A stretch of 64,000 nucleotides of DNA from Laetmonice hystrix. Lineage: Eukaryota. Made by a program: the position numbers and the translations under genes. The number at the start of each line of letters is the position of its first letter. Positions within the stretch are counted from its first letter, which is position 1. Shown piece after piece: positions 11,076 through 53,726 of the stretch. The notes under the pieces are model-generated. The model worked only from the letters and a program-made list of their open reading frames with translations. It did no database searches and had not been told where the DNA came from. The stretch spans positions 5,704,001 to 5,768,000 of the forward strand of contig OZ249451.1 of NCBI GenBank assembly GCA_965235115.1, given 5' to 3'.

Positions 11076-14008
11076 CGGAATCCCCTCTTTTACAGTCAGC
11101 CACATACAGAGGTCATGGCGGAATAGATCGTTAAGTTCCGATCATAGCCATCCATAATACAAGATATAGTCAGTTCTAAACGATGACAGCAGACCCAGCG
11201 TCACTGGGGAGTAGGCTTAGCTCGATTCTCAACCTGGCCTTGCTCAATGGATAACGAGACTCGATCGATCTTCCTATATGGCAAGGAGACTATCATGAAG
11301 GAAAGATTTCATCTCAAGGTCATGATGAAGGTCAGGGGATGCTCCATGATCCAAGCACACAAATATTATTTCACACTTTTGTTTTTGTGAGGGAAACGAA
11401 CAGGGAGAAAATGAAAAAAGACTATGGGAGTTAGGCAAGACCCACGTTTTCTGTTTTTTATTTTGTATATATAGTTGACAGTAAACATTGCACGGATTAT
11501 GTATGATGGGTTGAATAAAATAAGGACAAATGAAAAGATTTCGATTGCGCTCCAAGGATCTATGGTCCGGGCATAGAGGATCAGTTCACGTCAGAAGAGT
11601 CTGAATATGCAGAACTTTTCTTCAATAATTTTAAGTGACCGAACTTCCGCCAGATTAACAGCGACTTCTCCATATTAACGTGTACATGTACATGGGGTAT
11701 GGTTCTTACATTAAAACTTCCACCACAAATCATTAGTTCCCTAAAATCACCCTCATGAAAGACTTTCACCACAAATCATTATTTCACTAAAATCATGAAA
11801 CACTTTGTTATATCGCCAACCACCTGTCATAGAACGCCAAAATGTGATTTATGCTATTCTTGTCGAATCATTTCTTGGCTATAGCCCCGCCAGTCCCCTG
11901 GTTTCAGTTGCCTTGTATTATGGTTATTCGGGCAAAACGGATCATTTAGGTATATCTAGGCCCTATGACATTACTCTCCTGTATAAATTTTGTCGACCCG
12001 TTTTGTCCAATCCGTTATGCCCTTGAGTGCTACTGCTTGCATACAAAAATAGCGTACCCCTCAAACAATTCCAACGTATTGCCGAAACTTCCAATGCAAT
12101 CTTATGTTACATAATTTTTTCACCGTTATCCAAATATGCTGTGAAATACGCTAAGCCCCCAGTTTTACCTAAATCGCAGATTAAAACTTATTGTTGCTTG
12201 TGGTTTTTACCAGTTCTTATTGGTTCGTCCAACGACCTTACTAATTAACTGCTCCACAACTGCATATTAACGTCAAACATTTTCAATATTTTTCCCCATT
12301 AATGTTAGCAAAAACGCGTGACCAATTTTGCTGGGCCATTCGTATTTGTACAGAAAAATATGTTTCCACTTTTGTAACCGAATACAGAATGTACTTGCAT
12401 GTTCTTTCCGGAAAGAATAAATTACCAATTCAGTAGAATTCCTGGATTTTATATTTGATATCGACAGGATAAACTGATGCCGACATGATAAACCGTTTAC
12501 CATTAAGGAGATTACTACATATTTTCATCTACTCTGAATTTGTCCGCGTTCCCATGAAAGATTATTAAAAGGGGGCTCATTTGGTGGCGAGGAGCGTCTA
12601 TTAGCTAAAAGCCCCATTACTCTTGGGTCAGATTCCAGGAGATAAGCAACATATGTTCCATTAAGATACGTTAACGAGGCCATAACTTTAAAAAAAATTA
12701 TAACAATTTCGAACATCCCCAGTGTTCCCTCTAATAAAATCAACGTCCTCGTATAGCGAAATTATATCGACGACTGGTAGATTGTGAGTGAATGTATAAT
12801 GTGGAGACTTTAGAGCTTCAGACCAGCTTCATGGCGAAAACAATGTTAAGAATGAAGAGGTCCGTTCTAGCTCATGTCTCCGCATTAATAATAATTATTG
12901 TCAACCCGTTACAGGAGAAAATCTGACTATCAAATGGACTTGCGGAGATTAAGGAATTATAGACGGAGTCGGGTGAGGTTTTCGCTTCGCGTTCGCCACC
13001 CAACACAAGTCCTTACCGCCTACCTACGTCAGTTCAGGCATCATATTACACTTATTGTCAGGACGAGCTTATTGTTTAAGTGTTATCAATTTTTATTAGT
13101 ACTCTTCATGGTATTAAAACAAGAGTTCCCTGTCGTGTCATACGCTTGGCCATTATCTGGGCTATTCGATTAGGATTGTTCGGACTTCGTAAGCCGCGAA
13201 GAAGAAGTTTCGTAACATCTTGTACTATACTCCGATGAATTGTTTTTGAGAGCCCCCCGCCCCGAAAAGCCAGCGGTTGTATCTAGGGGGTCCCCACCCC
13301 TCCAAAACACCACTGGCGGTATACTAGACCTTCTATTGTTTTGATTCGGAAGTTAATTGTCCTGCATGAGATCACTCATGAACCACCTAAATAGGTTTTC
13401 ACAGTGTACCAGTTTTGCCATTTCCCAACTATAATTAGTTAAAGCTTTCCAGTAGGAAATGATGAAGTAGTGTCCAGCACGCTACATTTGATACGACGGA
13501 GAACAGACAATGGCCTAATGCAGAGCAATTTCCTCACAGTCGAGCGACCTTGACGTAATCATATGAAAACGACGTCAGCCATGTGCCTGGTAGGCCCGCC
13601 GTTCCTGGAAAACAATATCCAGGGTTGGTAAACATTGAAAACAGTTGGGATGTAACCTCATGGCTCCTTGTCTCGCCACCTTTTGTTTTTCCCATTCCTA
13701 GATGTATTCTGGAGTATCTTTGGGGATCCAGTAACAGTATTTTTAAAAAGTTAAATTCTGCGTTGCCGTCAGTGTCGTTGGGAGACTTGCCTTCCCATTG
13801 TACTGGGTACATTCTGTCCGTGTTGGCCAGGCAACACGATGTCTTTAGTATCCTTGGTGGTGGGAACCAGACAGGTGCCAAGGCGAGGGAATGTGACGTT
13901 ACGAGGTGTTAATTGTGTGGAGACACTGTGGTGGCACATAGAATTCTCTGGAAGGATGCCACATCCCGCATTCATCTCACAGTCTGGTCGTTCTCCATTC
14001 ACAGGCAA

Positions 14009-14082
14009 AAACTTCATCAAAACTTCATCAAAACTTCATCAAAACTTCATCAAAACTTCATCAAAACTTCATCAAAACTTCA
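14009..14082. repeat. 11-bp tandem repeat (AAAACTTCATC)n
   Basis: About 6.5 copies, directly visible. Confidence 0.95.
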
Positions 14083-15858
14083 TGTCTGAGCCCTCACAAA
14101 AATGTACAGCGTTCTGGAGACACCACGCAAAAACCGCGATATGGCAGGCTGGAGCGGATGAACGGTAAGTATAGTTCTAAATGTACTGTCGGACAAGTCT
14201 GTGAAGGTAATATCTCAGCTCATGATTAACCAATGGTCACAAAGTAGTTCGTAGGATTTGCTGTTGTCCTCTATGCTCCCCTCGGAGATCAGGGGCTAGA
14301 ATGGTCGTCAGTACAACTCCTGGCTTCTCGTAAAATGTGACAGATTTGGCTGGTGTGGGGAAGAGGTCGACTGTCGGATTGTAGTGTGCGTGACACAATT
14401 GGATTTCTATTCTCCGAGTGTTGGTTTTTCTCATTGGCCCTCCCCAGTACTCCTCCATGGTTATCAAAGGCTTTAGAATGCCCAGCCGTGTCTGTGGACT
14501 GGGATTATAAAAAAAATCGAAAAGAGTAGAGGAATGCCTCCCGGTGGCAGGTTTCGTTCTGACTTCAAGGTCTTTGAATGATTACATCGCCCTGAATATG
14601 GCTGACATGATATAGAACATCCAACTCAACCACTCACACGTAGAAGGTGCAATACCGCCTGATCTCTGCCGGATCTTTGCCAAGGGGGGGGGGGGGGGAT
14701 GCGCCGAGTAATGGGGGGGGCGAGTGATCACCGCTTCCAGAAAACAAAAATTTGACAAAGAGTCACGGATTCCAAAAAAAGAGTTCCGCGACCTTGGCAA
14801 TGACTTACGCACGTGATTATGGTAAATCGTGTTTGCGTCTTGGCGGTATCCGCCTATAACTGTCGACTTTGATAAAATGAAGGACCTGTGACGGCAAAGT
14901 GCACGACATTTGGCCTGGATTGGTCGTCAGCAGAGTGCTTGGATATTGCAGAACCCTCTTACAAGTAGTCCACTTAACGAAATGTTTGCATCGTATACAT
15001 ACAGGCTCATAACACTTGAGGGAAGATTGCAGGTAGTGAGTCTATAGAGCGAACTTGTGATAACCACAACAAATTCATGCTGATAAATATTGCGTAATTC
15101 ATATCAAAGAAATATAGTGATGGGGGAATATCATCATTTAGATTTCGATTAGGAAAATATCGCATGCATTAGTTCTCCGCTGGTATACGATTAATAATAC
15201 ATCATAAAATATCACCTGGCGGCGAATGGTCTTATTATTGGACTCTGTAGTCACTCTGTAGGTACGTTAGGCACAATAGATAGTTATACGTATTGTCAGT
15301 TGGCACAGTCATACGAACTGTCCACAACACCTGCTTTTGAGTTAGACAGAGTGGATGAACGAATTGATGTCTTAATGTGAAATATACTTCTGCTCATAAA
15401 ACAGAAATCTTATGTTTTAGTCCGTCCTGACAATGATTTCTCTGTGAGAAACTACATAGACTCGATAATACAGCCATGCAAGCAGTAAACGCAATTGTGA
15501 CTTATTATGTGAATTATGGTTTACTTAGGAAATGTGCATTAATCTGTGCTTGTTTCTTTGCCAAAGCTTTGTTTATGTCGTAGTGATTCCCCATATAATT
15601 GTCTCGTGGCACGCTGTCTGATGTATGGGCGGAGTTTAGAAGCACGGATGTTGCATGAGAAAACACTACTAACATATTCACAACCAATACTAGAGTATAG
15701 AAACCAAAGGATCCGATCTCGAGAGGGGTTAAGAGGGGTGAGCATCTAATGGGACATCGTATAAAGAGATGTTGAGATACGTCCCATGCCACGACAAATG
15801 TATTCTTTGATCTTTAGGTTTATTATCACAACTGAGAAACTAAGGCACATCTACTTAA

Positions 15859-16398
15859 AGGGGCATATTATGAGGAAACGTAAAAAATCGGTATTTCAAG
15901 GAACTTTTGCTGTTTTCATCAAGAGATCCTTTATTCATATTGCTTGTTAAACAAAGACAGACTTATCAGTTTCATTTTGTGTGAGAAATCGAAGTTTATG
16001 AAGCTCCCTTGCCCGCTTTTCTGCCGATTTCGTAAAATATTTTTTGGGTGGCATTCTGATGCCGGGCGATCGAGTGCAACTGCTGAATTGTTTACAACTA
16101 AGCGAAGCACGTGACTAATCACATGCAGAGAGTGCACACGCAGGAAGTGACACAGTATGCAATTACACGGGTTGATGCATGGGAGGTTGTCTATAGCAAA
16201 TTATGGCGGGAGATGTGCTATCGGGAGAAATCTATAGGTTTGGTCGTATAGAATCTACTTGTGCTGCATACGCAGCGAAAACACGTCGGAGGACAAAATG
16301 CTGTGGTAGGATTATTTACTTGGATCCCTAGTACACGATCATGTTGGATAAAAATTATTGCCGGAAGTCTAAAAAAACGTGTTTCATAGCATGCCCCT
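15859..16398. mobile_element. Kolobok-like MITE
   Basis: TTAA|AGGGGCAT...ATGCCCCT|TTAA, i.e. TTAA TSD with RR...YY termini. Homologous to 26965-27978. Confidence 0.75.
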
Positions 16399-18788
16399 TT
16401 AAAGGAACTATGTCACGGGGGATATCGACCACTGACGTACTTTATGGCACTGATTGTTTTTCATATTGATTCTGTTAACACATACCCCGAGTAGACAGCT
16501 GTGAAATCCTCCCTAATGTAGACAAATGAATAAAACTAGCTGAAGTGTCCGCAAAGTGCGATGAATCCACCATTTTGGTCCCCTTTGGCTGCCGCGAATC
16601 GTTTGAACGGGTCCCATGATCAATGTTTCACAGGTAAAAATGAAATTGCGAGGAAGCCCGATAATGATTATCTGCCAAACTATTCACTAGTATTTTTCGG
16701 GCCAAACTAAATAAATCCAATTGGCAATCATCGTTACTGCGATATGGTATTCCCTTACGTAATGCAGTTGTCCAGTTGGCAATGTTCAGATATATTTCAA
16801 ATCTTATTTCAGGCAGAGAGTTTGCTGGGAGATCTGACACCTGTCACCTGATCCACAATTACTCTGGGAATTATGCATTCATCCAGCTTGAAGCAGTTAT
16901 TGCATTACCACATGCAGTTATTGCATTACCACATGGGTCTGAGGAGGCCTCTGGTACTTCAGATTTTATCTGCAATTAATCACAGCCTCATATAATTTCA
17001 AATCAAAAGAGTAAAACAACTAAATCTGCAAAATCTAAAGACTAAGTTCAGTTAAACCCATCCTGTACTAACAGAAGAAACGTTAACCAAAAATAGACTG
17101 CTCAGATTCAGTTAATTAGTTAGCACTCTGACAAAGAAAGGTCCAGAAAGTACATGAAGAGAAGTAAGAGGAAGACATGCAATACGGCCAATTTTACAGG
17201 TACTATCTGGGGGTCATATCACTGAGGCATGGACTGTATCTACAGAAGATTATATGCACATCCATTATCTAGGAGAATCTGGGGACTTGAAAAAAGTGAT
17301 GACGGCGGTAGAGTTGTGTTAGCGTAAGCCATCCCAGCCAGCTCGAGTTGGTCACCTACATGATGTATGATTCATTCATCACGCTGTGGTCAACATTACA
17401 GCTCTGGTGTGATGAGCAATTGACTGCAAGGATACTTGCCCAGGATAGCTTCTCTCCAACACGACCCGCATCTCTCATTGGATATACAGGGTGTTACAGA
17501 AAAATAGGGAAAACATATTTGTGTCACTGTATACTGAACCAAGTGGGACGGTTTTTGGTATCATGTGTCATCAAAAAGAGGGGCCCTTCCTACCATATGA
17601 ACCGTTTGGGTGTCGGAAATCCTGGTTTTCTTCTTTCCTTCCTACCTGCCTGCCGGATTGCCTGTCTGATCGCCCGCCCATTTTGATTTAATCTCAACTT
17701 TAACTTTTGAAATGCGTGTAAACTAGACAAGTATGGCTTGTCATTAAGTGTTGATTGTTGTGTTTATGGTACATTTATGTTGAAACATAATATTGCTGCA
17801 CTATAATGAAGATGAAAATGGAGTCTTATTCCTGCAAGATTTCGTTTACACGATAGGGCCTGCTATTGATTGGCAATGGCTTTCATAATGCATGATCTCG
17901 GTTGTGGTAATATCTACTTTGTGTTGTAAATTAACCTCTAGAAATCGAAATGCTAAACGAAAGCATTTGCATATAGATTTCCCTTAAAAGTCATCTGCAG
18001 AAAAAATGAAAGGGACTGGCTTATCCTATAGCGGTATATAGATAGTCCCCTTCCTTGTGCGGCCACAATAAGTATCACACCTTTACCCGCCGTAACGTGC
18101 CCCTATACAGGCAGGGAATCCAAGGGTGAGGGTAAAAAGATCTGAGGGTGTGGGAGCTCCACGTCCCACCCTTTCCAACCTGGACTCGGTTCGTATAGAG
18201 CACCCAGGCCCTTTCCGTCATGTGAGCTGGGCATTGACTGTGAAACTAAACAGATGATCCGGTGATCCCGATCATCTTACACAATTAATGGTGAATCCGC
18301 GGCTGTAAAGTGTTATCAAACATTTGGTTTAATTATAGGCACATCTGCCTAACTTTTGATACGTTCACTTTCGACTCAGATGTCAGGAGCTGTTATTGCG
18401 AAATTCTATCAAAACAAGCCGTATGAGAATAACTTACTTGCTGTGACATTTTGCTGATGAAAGCCGAAACAGCAACATTTTTACCGGTAATCTTTGTCAT
18501 GAGAAAATGAGCTGTTGACATGAACCGTGGACGATATGTTTTGGGGGAACTTCAAGCCGTCTGATCAAGTGTTGCTTTAACTTAATTTTGAATGCGAATA
18601 TAAACGATCACATTACATTATCTACTGCTCGACCAGTATTCCTTCAGCCAGGTACGAAAGTCGCAATCAGGGAGCTTATCATTTATCGCTGGGAGTAGGT
18701 TCGTACACTAATATATATGTTTGAGGGGCACTAGCCTGGACCCCCTGGACCCCCCCCCCCCCGGACACTGTAGTGTTTGCTAGAGTAT

Positions 18789-45700: not shown

Positions 45701-48700
45701 TTCTTGAACTGACCTGTTGTTCTATGGTATAACCACACTGTTCCGACAGATCCATGATGAAGAGTACAGCAGCCCGCAGGTGGGCTAGAGCAGTGATGGC
45801 CTGCATCTCAATGGTATTACGCTCTTCAAGGGGGTGATCCAAAATCCCAGGGGTATCGATCACCTGTGAAAAAATACACCGAGAAAATCGGTCAATAACT
45901 TACAACAGAGAACCTGATGCCTCCTCTCCGACCACAAAAAGGTATGAGACTAAACAACCGTGGCACTGAGTAGAATTTTTTAAACTGTTGAACAGAAGGA
46001 ATCAGGGGATTGTACCGACCTGCCAGCGGAGATATCTGTAGTCCATGTGGCCAACAAACAGCGATCTGGTGGTGAATGCATACGGCTGGACTTCGACATC
46101 AGCCCTCGTGACCTGTCAAAATATAAAACAAAAATTCAAGTTAAATGCATCCTTGTGGTGTGTCCCCAATTATTATCCTTACCAAATATCAAGTTTAAAC
46201 TTAGAAACTAGCAAGAGGAATGAGTTCCAGGATTGACAGGCTGTTTGTCCTAATTAGATTGTGCCTAAAATCATGATACTGTCAAGGCTATAAAACCTGT
46301 TTCTCACCTTGTTCATGAAGCTTGACTTGCCAACGTTAGGGAAACCCGTCAGAAGGAGTGTACGTGTATTCGGATCGATGGAGGGTAGACGTGACAGATG
46401 TTGTCTCACCTGTTCCAGGTACGACAAACTCTGAACCTGTCTTTTCATTATTGTACACATTCTGGAAGAGTCAAAATATAATGTTTCACCTACCAGCTAG
46501 TCATGATGGGGGAAAGAGTCAGAGCTACTGTGTCAAGGTTTGGGAATATTTGCTCTACGCTCAAACTCTTCTTCTAGGACCACTTAAGAAAATTGTCCCC
46601 ACCACATTCTGGAGACCTACACAAACTTTTTGTATGGTTTTGAAAAGTTTAAAAAGATAATCTAACAGTATATGATAACTGGTATTTGCATGTATATCTG
46701 GATGTTTTCCTTATAACTTACCTGCCAAGCGCAGCACGCTTTAACTGCTTGCAACGGTACAAGGAGTCGGCATACTTCATTAACCTGACATAATCCTTAG
46801 CAACACTGCAATAAAAAAGGACAAGAAAACATAAATATTCTCCACATTTACATAGCGTTCAAAACTCTGGAAGCGTGAAAAGTATACCTTTCATGGATAA
46901 TATTATGGCATACCCCTTTTTTAGGGAGTCTATACATTGTACTCGTGTCAGTAATGGAGTAGTATACCGCTTTTGATTCAGAAAAATTTGTCCAACAGAA
47001 TAAAAATGAAAACCCACTTGTCAATAAGATGAGAGGCTGTGCTAATCTGACCCAAAGCCAACTTGTAATGGTCCTTGTCATATAGAACATTCATCAAGTC
47101 GGCATAAAAGGGATGGATGTCCTGCAAGAGAATGTCACAACATTCAAAATAAACCAGTCAAAATCAAATTACGATACAGCATAGATCAGTTTGAACACAC
47201 TGTAATATGCTGTCTCATACAGCAGGGTGCATATGTCGAATTGTGGTTTACCATCAGACGTATAAAGTTTATTAGAATGGCACATAATCAGAAAATGTGG
47301 GGACGTATGGCAGTTATCCCATTACTGTTGAAAAACAGACATTTACATGATAAATTTGGTATGGACATAAAAGATTTATGATGCCCAGATGAGAAAGTGT
47401 AAGGCTGAATGCAATATAGCACTAACTTTCTCTAAAACTAGGAAACAGAGAGACAAAAGTATGATAAACAACTTCTTCTCTCAAAAAAAATGTACCGTAA
47501 TACTATTTTAGAACATTTGTGTACATTTTAACTAGATGTCTTTATAAATAATTATGAATTACCATATCCTACAACAGGCTTAGCATCCTAAAAAATACTC
47601 ACGCCAAGCATTGGAAAGTCAGTGAGGATCTGGGAGAACTTATCATGGAAGGTTTGCTGTGCAAATTTGATCTTCCGTGTGTAGAACTGACGTATTCTTC
47701 CAATGGCATAGTGCTTGTGGATGACAGTAGGAGTTTTACGCTGGGTTTTAGACAACACGATGTCAATGAAATCCTGAAAAATACGCAGTATAGATATTGT
47801 TAGACATGAAATCAAGTATCATTACTCTATGTTAGTAGTGCATTGAAACCAGCCAAGCAATCAAAATGTTTCACAGAACGTTTTGTAAAGGCCAGTTCAT
47901 TGTTATTTGGTGGACTCCAGTCATTAGCGCAACGCGTTATCAAAGCCACGGCTTTTTTTCGAAGGTAGCGCCACAGCAATTCTCCCTGGGATTGCACACT
48001 GCCATTGCAGATTCCCCTGGGACAGGGATTGGTGGTACAGCCTGAGCTAGACACAACCAGGACAGGCCAGGATGTTCCGGCAGTTAGGAAGGGGCAGAGG
48101 AGTTAAGAAAAATGGGTTTGTACATCCCTTCTAAGGACACATGGGGTGTTTCCGGACCCCAAGTACACATTTGTTCCGATTATTTCGCATTCTATTTCTA
48201 GTTTTGCACCAGTAGGATGTCAAATACAAGTTATCTACAAAGGCAAAATTGGGCCTCATACAAAAAGATTGCGTCCCCAAAACATTTCTTTCAGACCTGC
48301 CAGAACCAATACTGAAGGAGGGAGGGTAGAATGCAAGAAAAACATAAAGGCTTGGTTACCAAACATCACAAATTTATTCATCAATTAACCTATATACAAC
48401 AATGATATATATACAGTCTATGCACAATGTATCCATCCATTAACCTATATACAGCAATGTACAGTTTATATACAACAAGTGTCACACAGTCAAAATCCCT
48501 TTCTTTCTGCCTCAGTCTGCACTGACAAACTGAAGGAGCTGGAATGCTGTCATGTTGCCCTCATCGTATTTCTTCCATAGGTCGATCACACTTTGTTCTC
48601 GGTCACAGTCAAAGTGACTTTGGCGGTGATGCAGCTTCCCTTGTTTGACAAGTTTCAGTTGTCGAGGCACCGAGGAAGCCTCTTGGGACAGCAGGTTGAT

Positions 48701-51700
48701 CACCCTGTAAAGGTGCTGGTTGGTGTGCATGGCTTGTGTGTTGAAGCGCACGTGCCATCCCTCAACGTCATAGCTTGTGCGTACAAGATAGCCATAGACT
48801 GACCAGTCAGTCGTTGCCCACCGCCGGCCCATCCATTGCCGTTTGATGTAGCGCAGGAGCGGCTGCAGGCAGTGTTTTGTTTCCTTGGGCACCCGGATCT
48901 TGAGGGTTTTAAAGGCATGGGGGATGTGCTCGCCAGGGAGGAATGGGAGGGAGAGCAGGAGTTTTATCTGCTTGTGCACGACCCCTTCACTGTAGTACAG
49001 TGGCTGAAACAAAACAAAAAATACACTCTCAATATACAAACCAATAATATTCCTTGATAAAAGTCAGGTAGTTCAATTCCAGGTTTCAAAATAATCAACC
49101 ACTGCAGCAACAAATAGAGGCTAGGTGTCAGGCCATGCAGCTGGCCATAGAGAATCTTTGTGTTAAATATGGGTACATCACCATTAAAACTGCGAGAGGA
49201 GGTTTTTGTACATGTACACACCTCAAGACCTAGCTCGCCAACCTGCTTCATGACTGCCTGTGTCCAGTGAAAGTAACAGCCGGTTAACTTCACCCGTGGG
49301 AAAACCTCTCTTAAACTTCTCCAGATGGCTCGCTCAAAATCAGTCACTGCTCTCTTCAGCAACATTGTCGGGAGGAGGGCCTTGATGGCTTTCATCACCT
49401 AGAAACACATCGATTATTTTGACTGATAAGGCTACATGACAATAATGCCATTTTTGCCACTTTGACTAAAGTTTGAAAAGCTCTTATATCACAGACTAAA
49501 ATCATGTCTCAACTTTTGTATCACATACCCTAACATAATCCTTCTTTGTCTTCCTCGACATGATGGCAAAGGCAAGGGGTATCTGTTTAATTTCCCCAGC
49601 CGGCGTCTTGCCAAACGAATGAACCGATAACAGTTGGCAGAAAGGCTTCTTCACAATCATAAATGTGGTGTCGATGTACCACGTCTGTGCCTTCCTGAGC
49701 AGCTTTAGCTGGGCATCTGTTGCTAGAATGATATGCCGGGAACATGCCTTCTTGATGTCTTTACGTACGAATCCTGGCACAATGTCAGTCCTCAGCTAAA
49801 TGAAAAAATTAACAACATTTGAAATAACCAGTCCCATTATATTGATATCAAATACTCTAGTAAGTGCTAGTACATCAATTAATGTAACACCTTATTCATC
49901 AAGTTCATAAATTCATAGGTCTAACACTCACCGGAAATTGAAGCGTCCTCGGGTCCTCATGAATAACGTGTTGCCTCATTCTGTCTGTTGCCCTGATGAT
50001 ATTTGCCAGTTTGAGTCGGCTGTGGTGTGGGACGGAGGGGTCCTGGCCTGCCATGACATCACGCACAATTCCTGGCGCAGGTTTCAGTATGTCTGCCATG
50101 GCCTTTTCTTTGACTGATGCTACCACCTTCACCTTCGTACCGATGCCAGGAGCAGGAGGATGAGTGTGGGCAGACACTCCAAGACAAAAGTTGTCGCCCT
50201 TCTGGATGACGGACGCAGTACAGCGGTCGTTTCGTTGACGTGTGCATCTCCAGTACGTCGTCGTAGCAGAGATTCTCTGTGAGGAGAGAAAGCAAACGTT
50301 TAATACAAAATTGTATTACTACTATTGTAAGAAAGCAAGGCGTTTATTGCTAGCTGACGTGCATGATGATGCCATTTAATTACCTTCACACAGAAGGTGA
50401 ATCCAAGGTTGTCAAGCAAAATGTTTTTGCGCTTCGTCGATCCTCGTTCGACTACTTCAAACAGAGGCTGGGTAGGCTCTGAAGACGGCTCGACGGGCTC
50501 TGTGTTACTTTGTGGAGAACACTCCTTCTCAACGTCTTTGCATATGAATTCCGGTGGGACGACATCAGTCCTCAGCTAAATGTAAAAAAAACCCACAATA
50601 TTTGAAATAACTATTGCCATTTGATATCGATTGCTCTAGTAAGTACAAGTAAATCAGTGAATCAACACCTTTATCCAGTTTCAGGGGTAAAAACGGAGAA
50701 TAGGGTAGTACTAGCATTGACGGACCAGTGCACCTCGGGAGGTACTTCCTCCACTCCCCTCTTGTCATTTAGATTAGATACCTTGCAGATTTCAGTCAGG
50801 CCAGGCGTTTTTAGGGTACCTAACGTTTTTTGCCCATTTTTTGGCACTTGATAGTACGGACCAGTGCACTGACTTGGGTACTCGCCCGGTGCCCTCGCTA
50901 CTCACATTTTGCGAGAAGCAAGACTAGTGCCTGTTTTGCACACTGCAGTTTATAGGCCTAAAACTCACCTCAAAATCAAGCGCCCTCCTTTCATTTTGCC
51001 TCCTGAGTTGCCTCATTCTGTCTGTTGCCCTGATGATATTTGCCAGTTTGAGTCGGCTGTGGTGTGGGAGGGAGGGGTCCTGGTCTGCCATGACATCACG
51101 CACAATTCTTGGTGCAGATTTCAGTACGTCTGCCATGGCCTTTTCTTTGACTGATGCTACCACCTTCACTGTCTTACCGATGCCAGGAGCAGGAGGATGA
51201 TTGTGGTCAAACACTCCAAGACAAAAGTTGTCACCCTTCTGGATGACGGATGCTGCACAGCGCTGTTGTCGTTGGCGCGTGCATCTCCAATATGTCGTTG
51301 TAGTAGAGGTTCTCTGTAAGGGGAAAAGGCAAACGTTTGAAAAATGACCTGAAAATTAGGCTACGACTTTAAGACTTAAGGGTTCCTTGCCAGATGACAT
51401 GTATGCAGGGTTTCCGCCAGGAAATAATTTATGCGGGGATAATCCATGCGAGAGAAGTGGTCTCTGTGCATCTCAGAGCAAAAATCTTTCCCAAATCTAT
51501 CAACAAAATTCCACTGTGTAATATATAGAAATATGGCATGAGTTTCAGACAGCACATTACCCTACTTCTGACTCAACATACTGTTGAAAATATTGAACAT
51601 AAATAGCTGCTGAAATATCCCCTGTTGTGCAAGTTATGCATAGGAGTTACCCCCCCCCCCCCCCACCGTCCTCCCCATTTTATTACCTTAACACAAAAGG

Positions 51701-53726
51701 TGAATCCAACGTTGTCAATTAAGAGGTTCTTGCGCCTTATTGATCCCCGTTCGACTATTTCAAACATAGGCTGGGTAGGCTGTGAAGACGGCTCTATGGG
51801 CTCAGTTTTGATTTGGTGGACCTCAGTGCCTATGTCGAGGAGCTCGACATCAGTGATGCCTTCATAGGGGATGGTTACTTGGCAGTCAGTTAAGCCCATC
51901 TCCTCATGTGATATGTCGTTTGAGGTTAAAAGATGAACGTCCTTGAAGCTGCTGTCTGGTTGAGTTGTTGTTAGAGGGAGCTGCAGTGGTTCGTCTACAG
52001 ACATGGGAATCTCATCAGGTGGTTCGCCGTGGGTTGTGGACACTCTGGAGCAGTCCTGACACTTCCAAACCAGATGCTCTCCTTGAATAGCCCCTTCAGT
52101 TCGATATTGTTCTGTGGTAACTCCACTCTCACACAACACGTGTTGCCATCGCTCACAAAATGTGCAAAAAAGCTCGTCTTTGTTGTTTTGCACAGGAAGC
52201 AAACATTTGGTGCAGTTGTCAGACATCATAACGATGGGGTCTTGAAGATGCAGTGACGGGGAGGCAGTGCTGCCACTCTGGGTTTGACCAAAAAAAAGTA
52301 TAAAGTGGCAGCACTGCATGGGGGTTCAGTAGGGCCTTCAGGGCCTGGGTGCATATACTGGTATACTCCACAAACTTTGACTAGTACCTCAGCACCATGA
52401 TTCTCTAAACTTACACATGGGTGGGCTGTATTTATAAACCTTTACAATAAGATTTCCAAAAATAAATGAATGAAAAGACCAGTAAGAAAGTTGCATTATG
52501 TGAGACATAGTGAGAGAACCTATGAGTGGAAATAACACTTCGAGCTGTTGTTCTAGAAGTATTACAATGTTGTACTGTTTTTTACAAGGATAGTCAGGCC
52601 TGTATGTGGTATACTATAACAACTGTTAGAAATAGGTATGTTTCACAGCTGAAATACTGCTGACTGGTTGTTAAACATTAATTACTAACTCACTCACTCA
52701 TCTGCTCATCACAATGAAGTCACTATAGATCTAGAAGTTATAAGATTATTGGCTTAGGTCCAGCATAATACCAAAATCTCCCTTGTCACACCTGTCCTTG
52801 CTTTAGCGTGGACTTAGCAGAAACAACTCTGAGTTGACAGGGCTGCAAGAACCCAAGATTAATATGCAGTGGTTATTTTGCCAGCAGGCATTCTGGCAAA
52901 AAAAGGAAATAAGTTTGAATAATTACCAACACAAAACAATAATCAAGCCTTCAAGTGGGTGGAGAAAAATATTTTAATAAGGTTTTTAAAGGTTTTCCTT
53001 TCCAAAATATAGGGCCCTTCCCATCAAAATATAGAGTGAATTTCTGACATCGTGTTGTTGAAATTGTAATGATGCTGGGGCAAAGCCAAGTGCCATAGCC
53101 TGCATAGCCATAGGCACAAAGCGATTCCAGGGGCCGGTGGTTATGCTCCCACGGAAAATGTCCTTTGCCTTGGCCAAATCTGAAGTAAATCTGTTTAATA
53201 TATTTGTTGCGGCTGGGTTTACCCGTGTTTTTATTAACCCAAGTCATGGCATATTGAGAAGCGTGGTACATTTTCAAAATCAGAGGCTGCAACTGTCTCT
53301 GAGTCTGAGTTATGCTTGACTGAGTTGAGGCAAGTTTCAATATTGTATACTGTATGCCAGCAAAACAACCACTGCACGAGGGGGGGGGCTTAGACCAGAG
53401 CAGAGGTTTGCGAGAGTAGCATGACGCTACCATCTCAAAAAGGTGTGAAGTTGACGACGCGTGGCGCTAGCGTAATGACTGGAGTCCGACTGGGAATGGG
53501 ACGGCGAGGAGTCGACACCGACCCGGGGACCCCGTCGTGGCGTGGGAGGCGGTATCGACGTGGTGATCTCTCACTAGTCTCAGAGATTCTCAGAGATCAC
53601 CACATAATACAAGTCTATAATCTGAGTATATCTAAAAAAATACTTTGAATTGAGTCAATAGAAACGGGGATTACGTACCTTCGCCGGCGGGACGACGGTG
53701 ATTTTCTTGAAGTTATAATGCGTCAT
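42776..53726 (-). CDS. GTPBP4: Nucleolar GTP-binding protein 1 (NOG1/GTPBP4), about 638 aa, 15 coding exons
   Basis: Exons 53726-53679 ([16 protein letters not shown]), 47773-47603, 47121-47018, 46805-46722, 46461-46308 (GFPNVGKSS), 46112-46020, 45863-45714 (IDTPG), 45558-45361 (NKID), 45149-45039, 44743-44608, 44471-44371, 44152-44040, 43682-43535, 43274-43122 and 42928-42776 ([18 protein letters not shown]). All are GT-AG with consistent phases. Confidence 0.95.
48373..48378 (-). terminator. Candidate polyadenylation signal of the nested MULE gene
   Basis: AATAAA on the minus strand about 135 nt after the stop at 48512, inside NOG1 intron 1. Confidence 0.55.
48512..52229 (-). CDS. PHD-FLYWCH-FLYWCH-MULE (Mutator-family) transposase-derived gene, about 786 aa, 7 exons, nested in NOG1 intron 1
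   Basis: Exons 52229-51687, 51313-50969, 50575-50384, 50276-49932, 49795-49529, 49398-49222 and 49003-48512 are all GT-AG, all phase 0, with no internal stop. C4HC3 PHD finger; two YWRC..C..HxH FLYWCH domains; MULE motifs [21 protein letters not shown] and [10 protein letters not shown]. Confidence 0.88.

What the first reader, a model, noticed from the sequence alone, without database searches (positions are those of the whole stretch)
47774..53726. Intact 7-exon PHD-FLYWCH-MULE transposase gene in NOG1 intron 1, splice-compatible with NOG1 exon 1
Seen: NOG1 intron 1 is 5.9 kb while its other introns are under ~0.6 kb. It holds a same-strand, stop-free ~786-aa spliced ORF with its own AATAAA (48373-48378). 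NOG1 exon 1 (16 codons) ends in phase 0, and a candidate acceptor (TTTTTTTTGGTCAAACCCAG|AGT, exon start 52277) opens in phase 0, 16 codons before the PHD Met. Splicing 53679 to 52277 would give [22 protein letters not shown]...-PHD-FLYWCH-FLYWCH-MULE (~818 aa). I found no TIRs or TSD by eye. Known: primate CSB-PGBD3 is a host-exon/transposase fusion made by alternative splicing and intronic polyadenylation, and FHY3/FAR1 and MUSTANG are domesticated MULEs. Inference: one ribosome-biogenesis promoter may yield either NOG1 or a chromatin-reading transposase-derived protein through a mutually exclusive splice and poly(A) choice. I do not know of such an arrangement described for NOG1.
Basis: partly seen in the sequence, partly recalled or inferred. 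Interest (0 to 1): 0.85.

Follow-up and report, generated by a model that had tools for sequence, protein, structure and literature searches.

The report
Old MULE transposon inside NOG1 intron
The oversized first intron of the ribosome-assembly gene NOG1 holds one old, single-copy Mutator-type transposon with its own end repeats and an intact, expressed, correctly spliced transposase gene; this is an ordinary kind of insertion, and the proposed NOG1-transposase fusion protein is still unproven.

Summary
A stop-free, seven-exon, 786-aa PHD–FLYWCH–FLYWCH–MULE gene lies on the NOG1 strand inside NOG1 intron 1. All its introns are phase 0, and it has an AATAAA and an in-frame AG at 52277. Transcriptome-like contigs from the same sample confirm three of the six introns exactly.

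Arms at 53487-53422 and 47912-47973 bound a 5,576-nt element, leaving a 329-nt intron, which is normal for this gene. This copy is single in the genome, with decayed TIRs, no target-site duplication and nested repeats.

A sister family is about 25% diverged and has the same intron positions. It is a true transposon, with three ~97%-identical copies, 34-nt perfect TIRs, an 8-bp duplication and 238 TIR matches.

The DDE/CxxH residues are intact. The haplotype differences (five synonymous, two non-synonymous) suggest the ORF is under selection.

The candidate acceptor sits inside a ~52-nt repeat insertion that the sister family lacks. No RNA contig covers that stretch or NOG1 exon 1, so the fusion is untested.

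Verdict: a MULE insertion carrying a maintained gene, a new member of a known kind. Domestication is plausible; the fusion is speculative.

The parts
53679..53726 (-). NOG1 coding exon 1 ([16 protein letters not shown]), ends in phase 0, donor gtacgt
47774..53678 (-). NOG1 intron 1 (5,905 nt). Without the transposon, 329 nt remain.
47603..47773 (-). NOG1 exon 2 ([13 protein letters not shown]...), NOG1_N domain
47912..53487 (-). Whole MULE element (5,576 nt), bounded by the inverted repeats and single-copy in the genome
53422..53487 (-). 5' terminal inverted repeat arm (outer end GGACTCCAGTCATTA), CpG-rich
47912..47973 (-). 3' terminal inverted repeat arm (reverse complement of the 5' arm; 49 of 67 aligned columns match)
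52352..52389 (-). Upstream block conserved with the sister element (89% over 38 nt); a candidate promoter element
52264..52317 (-). Hairpin-forming repeat insertion of ~52-54 nt with 14-nt perfect arms, absent from the sister element. Its core recurs at least 18 times in the genome. It holds the candidate acceptor (exon would start at 52277) and an in-frame upstream ATG at 52319-52317.
51687..52229 (-). Transposase exon 1: Met, PHD finger, acidic linker, first half of FLYWCH 1
   Evidence: RNA contig 51955-52105
50969..51313 (-). Exon 2: second half of FLYWCH 1 plus linker
   Evidence: RNA contig 51159-51308
50681..50945 (-). High-copy interspersed repeat nested in intron 2 (84-94% identical to dozens of genomic copies)
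50384..50575 (-). Exon 3: chimeric exon made by an internal tandem duplication (head resembles the head of exon 5, tail resembles the tail of exon 1)
   Evidence: RNA joint 50276|50384
49932..50276 (-). Exon 4: second half of FLYWCH 2 plus linker (87% nt identity to exon 2)
   Evidence: RNA joints 50276|50384 and 49795|49932
49529..49795 (-). Exon 5: start of the MULE core, first catalytic Asp (D517, WYIDTTF)
   Evidence: RNA joint 49795|49932
49222..49398 (-). Exon 6: MULE domain, second Asp (D584, TDFE), and CxxH (C605, H608)
   Evidence: RNA joint 49003|49222
48512..49003 (-). Exon 7: C-terminal core with the catalytic Glu (E704, DVEGWH), and the stop codon
   Evidence: RNA contig reaching 48440
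48373..48378 (-). AATAAA polyadenylation signal, 134 nt after the stop codon
52647..53294 (-). 5' non-coding part of the element, holding fragments of three other interspersed repeat families (53176-53294, 52859-52941, 52647-52703)

Best explanation
The excess length of NOG1 intron 1 is a single-copy, 5.6-kb Mutator-like (MULE) DNA transposon of the FLYWCH-bearing, Phantom-like kind, with an N-terminal PHD finger. It is inserted in the same orientation as NOG1 and bounded by decayed terminal inverted repeats.

It carries an intron-containing transposase gene that is intact, transcribed, spliced as predicted and catalytically complete on paper.

Inferred, not shown:
- It is transcribed from its own proximal promoter, just upstream of the ATG.
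- It ends at its own poly(A) signal, so it behaves as a nested gene independent of NOG1.

The insertion looks old, yet the reading frame has been kept open by selection. So it is either a lone element that can still move or an early-stage co-opted gene. It also gained a second FLYWCH DNA-binding module through an in-frame internal duplication.
For: TIRs and boundaries:
- The TIR alignment has a 15/15 perfect core and 49 of 67 columns matching. It scores 44 against 22.6 +/- 2.2 for shuffles (0 of 300 reached it); the direct-orientation control scores 24.
- Removing 47912-53487 leaves a 329-nt intron, like NOG1's other introns.

Sister family:
- It has three ~97%-identical ~5.3-kb copies with 34-nt perfect TIRs and an 8-bp TSD (GGCTCAAG).
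- One copy has an intact 588-aa ORF with the same intron positions and phases as the window's gene.
- Its TIR matches 238 places in the genome against 0 for the control, many as pairs 400-600 nt apart.

Wider relatives:
- The same PHD-FLYWCH-MULE architecture occurs in intron-less proteins of 626-731 aa on ~3.2-3.6 kb contigs.
- 1,578 library relatives score E<=0.001.

Expression:
- Transcriptome-like contigs give exact joints at 49003|49222, 49795|49932 and 50276|50384. They lie only on exons.

Intact protein and selection:
- D517, D584, E704, C605 and H608 are kept, and all but two of the highly conserved core columns are kept.
- dN/dS against the sister family is 0.26 overall and 0.19 for the core.
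- Haplotype differences are 5 synonymous and 2 non-synonymous (binomial P=0.013). Density is 7 per 2,361 nt of coding sequence against 26 per 3,215 nt of non-coding element sequence (Fisher P=0.013).
- An ORF of this size survives 5% neutral substitution in only 0.9% of simulations.

Signs of age:
- The TIR arms are 73% alike, there is no TSD, and repeats are nested inside the element.

Own promoter:
- About 160 nt upstream of the ATG are conserved with the sister element, which has TATAAAAG about 65 nt before its ATG.
Against: - No TSD was found, and this copy has no second copy or MITE derivative. Its own mobility is therefore not shown.
- The 5' end of the transcript is not mapped. This copy lacks the sister's TATA box, and the repeat insertion splits its proximal region, so its own promoter may be weak or dead.
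- The selection signal rests on 7 exonic differences within one individual.
- The duplicated FLYWCH modules diverge at dN/dS 0.92, so at least part of the protein is weakly constrained.
- MULE TIRs can be imperfect from the start, so the TIR-based age is soft.
- Placement in the Phantom clade was not tested by phylogeny.
Confidence: 0.8

Rival explanations
1. Nascent host-transposase fusion. Transcripts from the NOG1 promoter sometimes splice exon 1 (donor at 53679) to the acceptor at 52277 and end at the element's AATAAA. The product would be a ~818-aa NOG1(1-16)-PHD-FLYWCH-FLYWCH-MULE protein, made at the expense of NOG1 mRNA.
For: - The element is in the same orientation as NOG1, and exon 1 ends in phase 0.
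- The AG at 52279-52278 follows a T8 pyrimidine run and opens 16 in-frame codons before the Met.
- By a crude pyrimidine count this acceptor is as good as NOG1's real exon 2 acceptor (13 of 18 each, read).
- This copy has lost the sister family's TATA box, and a repeat insertion delivered the acceptor right in front of the ORF. The gene could therefore depend on read-through from NOG1.
- All element introns are phase 0, so exon 1 would also be in frame with any internal element exon.
- The mechanism is well documented elsewhere: CSB-PGBD3 (PMC2268245) and transposase capture (bioRxiv 10.1101/2020.05.07.082677).
Against: - No junction evidence exists. The RNA-like run has no contig between 52105 and 52350, nor on NOG1 exon 1.
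- Frame compatibility has about a 1-in-3 chance.
- The phase-0 structure is ancestral to a mobile family located elsewhere.
- The frame upstream of the Met is open anyway, back to an ATG at 52319 that the same insertion created.
- NOG1 is an essential ribosome-biogenesis GTPase (general knowledge), so an efficient trap in intron 1 should be selected against.
- A 16-residue host part would add no domain.
Confidence: 0.12
2. Fully domesticated gene. The element can no longer move, and its PHD-2xFLYWCH-MULE protein now serves the host, for example as a DNA- or chromatin-binding factor. It would be a nested gene fixed in the NOG1 intron.
For: - The copy is single, with no MITE derivatives, decayed TIRs, no TSD and nested repeats.
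- The ORF is nevertheless intact, expressed and spliced.
- Exonic haplotype differences are mostly synonymous and rarer than non-coding ones.
- No empty-site joint appears in the three DNA runs.
- It has a lineage-specific second FLYWCH module.
Against: - Orthology and synteny in other species could not be tested. No protein more than 42% identical over exon 7 exists in the 1.84-billion representative library.
- The full catalytic set is retained, as expected for a working transposase.
- A cut-and-paste element can stay single-copy while still moving.
- The polymorphism sample is tiny and comes from one individual.
Confidence: 0.35
3. A recently inserted copy of a currently active intron-containing MULE.
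For: - It has TIRs and an intact transposase with the DDE residues.
- A clearly active sister family is in the same genome.
Against: - This copy is about 25% diverged from that family (dS 0.79) and has no near-identical copy anywhere.
- Its TIR arms are only 73% alike and it has no TSD.
- It carries nested repeats that are 74-94% identical to their own families.
Confidence: 0.08
4. A dead transposon relic whose long ORF survives by chance.
For: Single copy, decayed ends.
Against: - 2,358 coding nt have no stop, and all six splice sites are intact.
- The transcript is spliced.
- The conserved catalytic columns are kept.
- A stop-free frame survives in 0.9% of simulations at 5% neutral divergence and 0.03% at 7.5%.
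Confidence: 0.02

Closest known systems
Animal MULE/Mutator transposons of the Phantom group (FLYWCH-bearing; includes Muta1 of Aedes aegypti), and PHD-bearing Rehavkus elements (Dupeyron et al. 2019, PMC6446971)
   Same: MULE DDE transposase core with CxxH, a FLYWCH zinc finger upstream of the core, TIRs, and an 8-10-bp TSD in the sister family. An N-terminal PHD also occurs in many database relatives.
   Different: - This copy is single, with decayed TIRs and no TSD.
- It has six introns and two FLYWCH modules.
- Clade membership was not tested by phylogeny.
- In that paper's table, PHD is listed for Rehavkus, not for Phantom.
CSB-PGBD3 (primate ERCC6 intron 5 piggyBac fusion; PMC2268245, PMC3459987) and vertebrate host-transposase fusion genes (Cosby et al., bioRxiv 10.1101/2020.05.07.082677)
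   Same: A transposon in a host intron, in sense orientation, with an acceptor-like site in frame ahead of the transposase ORF and its own poly(A) signal.
   Different: - No chimeric transcript is shown here.
- The host part would be only 16 residues with no domain.
- The superfamily is MULE, not piggyBac.
- The catalytic residues are intact.
- Conservation across species is unknown.
Domesticated MULE genes FHY3/FAR1 and MUSTANG (plants), and intron-containing domesticated transposases such as PGBD5 (PMC3902484)
   Same: A transposase-derived, intron-containing, expressed single-copy gene with signs of purifying selection.
   Different: - Those genes are conserved at orthologous loci over long times and lack TIRs.
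- TIR remnants are still visible here, orthology is untested, and a mobile sister family with the same introns shows the introns predate any domestication.
Maize MuDR mudrA (own knowledge: an intron-containing MULE transposase gene; promoters within the TIRs per PMC3310237 abstract)
   Same: An autonomous MULE whose transposase gene has introns, so spliced mRNA is normal for the superfamily.
   Different: The DNA-binding domains differ (PHD and FLYWCH here). The promoter appears to be proximal to the ATG rather than in the TIR; this is an inference.

Membership tests
MULE / Mutator superfamily DNA transposon | MULE DDE transposase core with conserved D, D, E and the CxxH motif | tested here: met
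   - Pfam MULE on exon 6.
- D517, D584, E704, C605 and H608, and 44 of 46 highly conserved core columns covered by this protein, are kept against 19 full-length relatives.
- 1,578 relatives at E<=0.001, with full-length ones carrying PF10551 above threshold.
MULE / Mutator superfamily DNA transposon | Terminal inverted repeats bounding the element | tested here: met
   Arms at 53487-53422 and 47912-47973: a 15/15 perfect core and 49 of 67 columns overall. Score 44 against shuffles of 22.6 +/- 2.2, with 0 of 300 reaching it. The repeats are imperfect.
MULE / Mutator superfamily DNA transposon | Target-site duplication of about 8-11 bp | tested here: not met
   No 8-11-bp direct repeat with at most 1 mismatch lies next to the TIR ends. 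The sister copy B has an 8-bp TSD, GGCTCAAG.
MULE / Mutator superfamily DNA transposon | Evidence of mobility: several copies or non-autonomous derivatives sharing the ends | tested here: not met
   - This copy and its termini are unique in the 627-Mb genome.
- The sister family meets it, with three ~97% copies and 238 TIR matches against 0 for the control.
Phantom clade of animal MULEs | FLYWCH zinc finger N-terminal to the transposase core | tested here: met
   FLYWCH (PF04500) scores above the curated cut-off on exons 2 and 4. Both modules keep the W-x-C...C...H-x-H residues (read).
Phantom clade of animal MULEs | Phylogenetic placement with canonical Phantom/Muta elements | not tested
The label is a resemblance only.
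Host-transposase fusion gene (CSB-PGBD3 type) | Transposon in a host intron, sense orientation, with an in-frame acceptor before the transposase ORF and its own poly(A) signal | tested here: met
   The acceptor is only a sequence candidate, and it lies in a secondary repeat insertion.
Host-transposase fusion gene (CSB-PGBD3 type) | Chimeric mRNA joining a host exon to the transposase exon | tested here: inconclusive
   The only RNA-like run (X4, contigs) has nothing between 52105 and 52350 or on NOG1 exon 1. No run on record as RNA was found.
Domesticated transposase gene | Purifying selection on the ORF at this locus | tested here: inconclusive
   - 5 synonymous against 2 non-synonymous haplotype differences (P=0.013).
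- Lower density of differences in exons (P=0.013).
- An intact ORF despite signs of age.
- The signal is suggestive, but it comes from one individual and 7 sites.
Domesticated transposase gene | Orthologous, syntenic conservation across species and loss of mobility | not testable with these tools
   - No close relative's genome could be reached.
- The best library hit to exon 7 is 42% identical.
- The contig holding it gave no DNA.

The most novel reading that the evidence does not exclude
A transposase capture caught in the making in an invertebrate. A lone MULE in intron 1 of the essential gene NOG1 lost its TATA promoter. A secondary ~52-nt hairpin repeat insertion then placed a pyrimidine tract and an AG in frame just ahead of its ORF. 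The PHD-2xFLYWCH-MULE protein would now be produced, at least in part, as a NOG1-exon-1 fusion from the ribosome-biogenesis promoter, and is kept by host selection.
Probability: 0.1. Interest if true: 0.6.

Novelty: new member of a known kind. Interest (0 to 1): 0.3.

Why it matters
As it stands, this explains an odd intron: a transposon sits in it. It also adds one well-delimited, intron-containing PHD-FLYWCH-MULE element, plus an active sister family with MITE derivatives, to the thin record of animal MULEs.

The more interesting part is that this copy is single and has worn ends, yet its reading frame is intact, expressed and apparently constrained. That is the expected picture for a transposase on its way to becoming a host gene. 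It sits where read-through from an essential, highly expressed gene could feed it.

If long-read RNA showed the NOG1-exon-1 junction, it would be a rare invertebrate MULE example of the transposase-capture route described for vertebrates. If not, it is an ordinary nested transposon gene.

Tried and rejected
- **RNA runs.** Two searches, one with the whole intron and one with exon 7 plus the 3' UTR, listed no run on record as RNA. One small run of unknown kind (X4) behaved like a transcriptome and was used. Its contigs cannot give transcript ends, and they leave 52105-52350 and NOG1 exon 1 uncovered. My laid stretch held only 62 nt of NOG1 exon 1 plus 5' UTR and 24 nt of exon 2, so NOG1's own splicing was not seen either. 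Both read tools are now exhausted.
- **TSD.** A scan around both TIR ends found none.
- **Gene conversion as the source of the SNP cluster at 50262-50628.** The sites fall outside the alignable paralogous segment, or do not match it. Rejected.
- **Orthologue or synteny through the protein library.** The best hit to exon 7 is 42% identical. Its contig shows further same-strand exon-like ORFs but returned no DNA and had no NOG1 domains on record.
- **Rfam and tRNA scans of the NOG1/element region.** Nothing found, so no intronic snoRNA and no tRNA-derived SINE call.
- **Earlier scan notes.** None for this place or these words.
- **Degenerate W-type TIR pattern in the genome.** Only its own two arms, plus hits at the level of the control.
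- **Full-length protein searches and structure prediction of the spliced product.** Not run, because the spliced protein has no single reference and long sequences must not be typed. I used exon-wise references and scripts instead.

Full report
**What is there**

On the minus strand, NOG1 coding exon 1 (53726-53679, 16 codons, phase 0) is followed by a 5,905-nt intron. Exon 2 starts at 47773. The host gene is NOG1/GTPBP4: downstream exons hit NOG1_N, NOG1 and NOGCT, and the exon-like ORFs down to about 42776 are separated by short gaps only.

It has seven exons: 52229-51687, 51313-50969, 50575-50384, 50276-49932, 49795-49529, 49398-49222 and 49003-48512. There are six GT..AG introns, all phase 0, and the protein is 786 aa without a stop. 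Exon-wise Pfam scans give PHD, FLYWCH twice, and MULE. AATAAA lies at 48378-48373. The AG at 52279-52278 opens 16 in-frame codons before the Met.

**The element has ends**

The arms are 53487-53422 and 47912-47973. The core is 15/15 perfect (GGACTCCAGTCATTA), and 49 of 67 aligned columns match. The local alignment score is 44. For 300 shuffles the mean is 22.6 +/- 2.2 and the maximum 31; the same-orientation control scores 24.

The arms mark out a 5,576-nt unit. Removing it leaves 329 nt of intron, which fits this gene's other introns. I found no target-site duplication.

**It belongs to a transposon lineage that is mobile in this genome**

A DNA search of the whole 627-Mb assembly found this copy only once. 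It also found three related loci at 69-74% DNA identity. Those three share a ~5.3-kb unit at about 97% identity. That unit has 34-nt perfect TIRs (CCAGAGGAGTCTGCTACGCGAGGAGTGTGCTACG), and in copy B an 8-bp direct repeat, GGCTCAAG, on both flanks.

Copy B encodes an intact 588-aa PHD-FLYWCH-MULE protein in five exons. Its intron positions and phases are those of the window's gene. Copy A has a 2-nt deletion near the C-terminus and a 6-kb insertion, and copy C is rearranged.

The sister TIR matches 238 places in the genome (119 on each strand) against 0 for the reversed control. Many matches are inverted pairs 400-600 nt apart, which are MITE-like derivatives. By contrast, the window element's termini and TIR motif occur nowhere else.

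The genome holds at least 50 further loci with a related C-terminal domain. The public library holds 1,578 relatives at E<=0.001, the best at only 42% identity. Full-length relatives show the same PHD-FLYWCH-MULE order as single ORFs of 626-731 aa on 3.2-3.6-kb contigs. Variants carry OTU or BTB domains. This matches published descriptions of FLYWCH-bearing Phantom MULEs and PHD-bearing Rehavkus elements (PMC6446971). I did not test clade membership by a tree.

**It is expressed and spliced**

No run is on record as RNA. One 58-Mb run from the same sample (X4) held 81% of the words of exon 7 plus the 3' UTR, but only 20% of the whole intron. When laid on the region, its contigs sit only on exons (and on high-copy repeats). 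They carry exact joints at 49003|49222, 49795|49932 and 50276|50384. These joints are absent from the three DNA runs.

I therefore read X4 as cDNA. Three of the six predicted introns are confirmed, both FLYWCH modules are in the mRNA, and the transcript extends at least 72 nt past the stop. Coverage falls towards the 5' end, from depth 25 to depth 5. It is absent from 52105 upward, so the transcript start is unknown.

**Age and selection**

Several features point to an old insertion:
- The TIR arms are 73% alike.
- There is no TSD.
- A high-copy repeat sits in intron 2, 84-94% identical to its relatives.
- Fragments of three other repeat families lie in the 5' non-coding part.

Yet the ORF is whole. 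In simulation, a stop-free frame of this length survives 5% neutral substitution 0.9% of the time, and 7.5% substitution 0.03% of the time.

The catalytic D517, D584 and E704, the CxxH motif (C605, H608) and nearly all strongly conserved core columns are retained. Against sister copy B, dN/dS is 0.26 overall and 0.19 for the core, with dS 0.79.

Within the sequenced individual, 33 haplotype differences fall inside the element. Seven are exonic: five synonymous and two non-synonymous (binomial P=0.013 against a 3:1 neutral expectation). Density is 7 per 2,361 nt in coding sequence against 26 per 3,215 nt in non-coding element sequence (Fisher P=0.013). The DNA runs show contigs running through the 5' boundary, and no joint that skips the element. 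This is a small sample from one animal, but it points to constraint acting on this locus.

The protein also carries a lineage-specific in-frame tandem duplication:
- Exon 4 copies exon 2 (87% nt identity, dN/dS 0.92).
- Exon 3 is a chimera of the head of exon 5 and the tail of exon 1.
- The result is two FLYWCH modules where the sister family and distant relatives have one.

**The fusion idea**

The homology between this element and the sister family continues for about 160 nt upstream of the ATG (52389-52230) and then stops. In the sister element this stretch holds TATAAAAG about 65 nt before the ATG. That suggests a proximal promoter and a short 5' UTR, which is an inference.

In the window's copy the TATA box is not conserved. 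The stretch is interrupted by a ~52-nt insertion with 14-nt perfect inverted arms (52264-52277 and 52304-52317). The core of this insertion recurs at least 18 times elsewhere in the genome, and the DNA runs show repeat-type loose ends at its borders.

The acceptor is therefore a late, copy-specific acquisition. The all-phase-0 exon structure, however, is inherited from a mobile family that has nothing to do with NOG1.

This cuts both ways. It removes the appearance of design. It also describes how a promoter-damaged element could come to depend on read-through from the host gene. No RNA evidence bears on it.

My odds for the fusion are about 0.1. I put about 0.35 on full domestication as a nested gene, although I could not test whether this copy still moves.

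**Comparison and verdict**

This is a MULE insertion in a host intron, carrying a live transposase gene. It works like other autonomous MULEs with spliced transposase mRNAs. It resembles the starting material of CSB-PGBD3-type captures (PMC2268245; bioRxiv 10.1101/2020.05.07.082677). The defining chimeric transcript and cross-species conservation are not shown.

It is a new member of a known kind and of modest interest. It would become interesting if the NOG1 junction or orthologous conservation were demonstrated.

Noticed in passing
G000:C2:38500120-38505425 (loci L003, L012, L015); also C21:22.48 Mb (L002, L011, L014) and C2:39.08 Mb (L004, L013, L016): A recently active intron-containing MULE family. 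Three ~97%-identical ~5.3-kb copies have 34-nt perfect TIRs; copy B has an 8-bp TSD and an intact 588-aa PHD-FLYWCH-MULE ORF in five exons. The TIR matches 238 places in the genome, many as inverted pairs 400-600 nt apart (MITE-like derivatives).
   Followed up: partly
window 50681-50945 (intron 2 of the transposase gene): A ~265-nt high-copy interspersed repeat, 84-94% identical to dozens of copies on many chromosomes. DNA k-mer depth there is 50-80 times that of the flanks, and it is also present in the RNA-like run. No tRNA or Rfam match.
   Followed up: partly
window 52264-52317, and loci near C8:29.00, 29.26 and 30.07 Mb, C12:28.495 Mb, C3:16.717 Mb: The ~40-nt core of the hairpin insertion recurs at least 18 times. 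At five or more loci it lies 1-2 kb from a copy of the intron-2 repeat, on the opposite strand. The two may be parts of one larger repeat family.
   Followed up: no
window 50262-50628: A local cluster of 15 haplotype differences in about 370 nt (about 4%), against about 0.2% across 48209-49598. All four exonic differences in the cluster are synonymous. Gene conversion from the duplicated module does not explain it.
   Followed up: partly
locus L011+L014, reverse-complemented coordinates 11166-17243 (G000:C21, about 22.478-22.484 Mb): Copy A of the sister MULE carries a ~6-kb insertion in its 3' part, relative to copy B. I did not examine its content.
   Followed up: no
G000:C1:33431165-33431629 and C4:8273923-8274387: Two loci with intron-less open frames of 677 aa that carry a related MULE C-terminal domain (36% identity). 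These are other, possibly intact, MULE lineages in the same genome.
   Followed up: no
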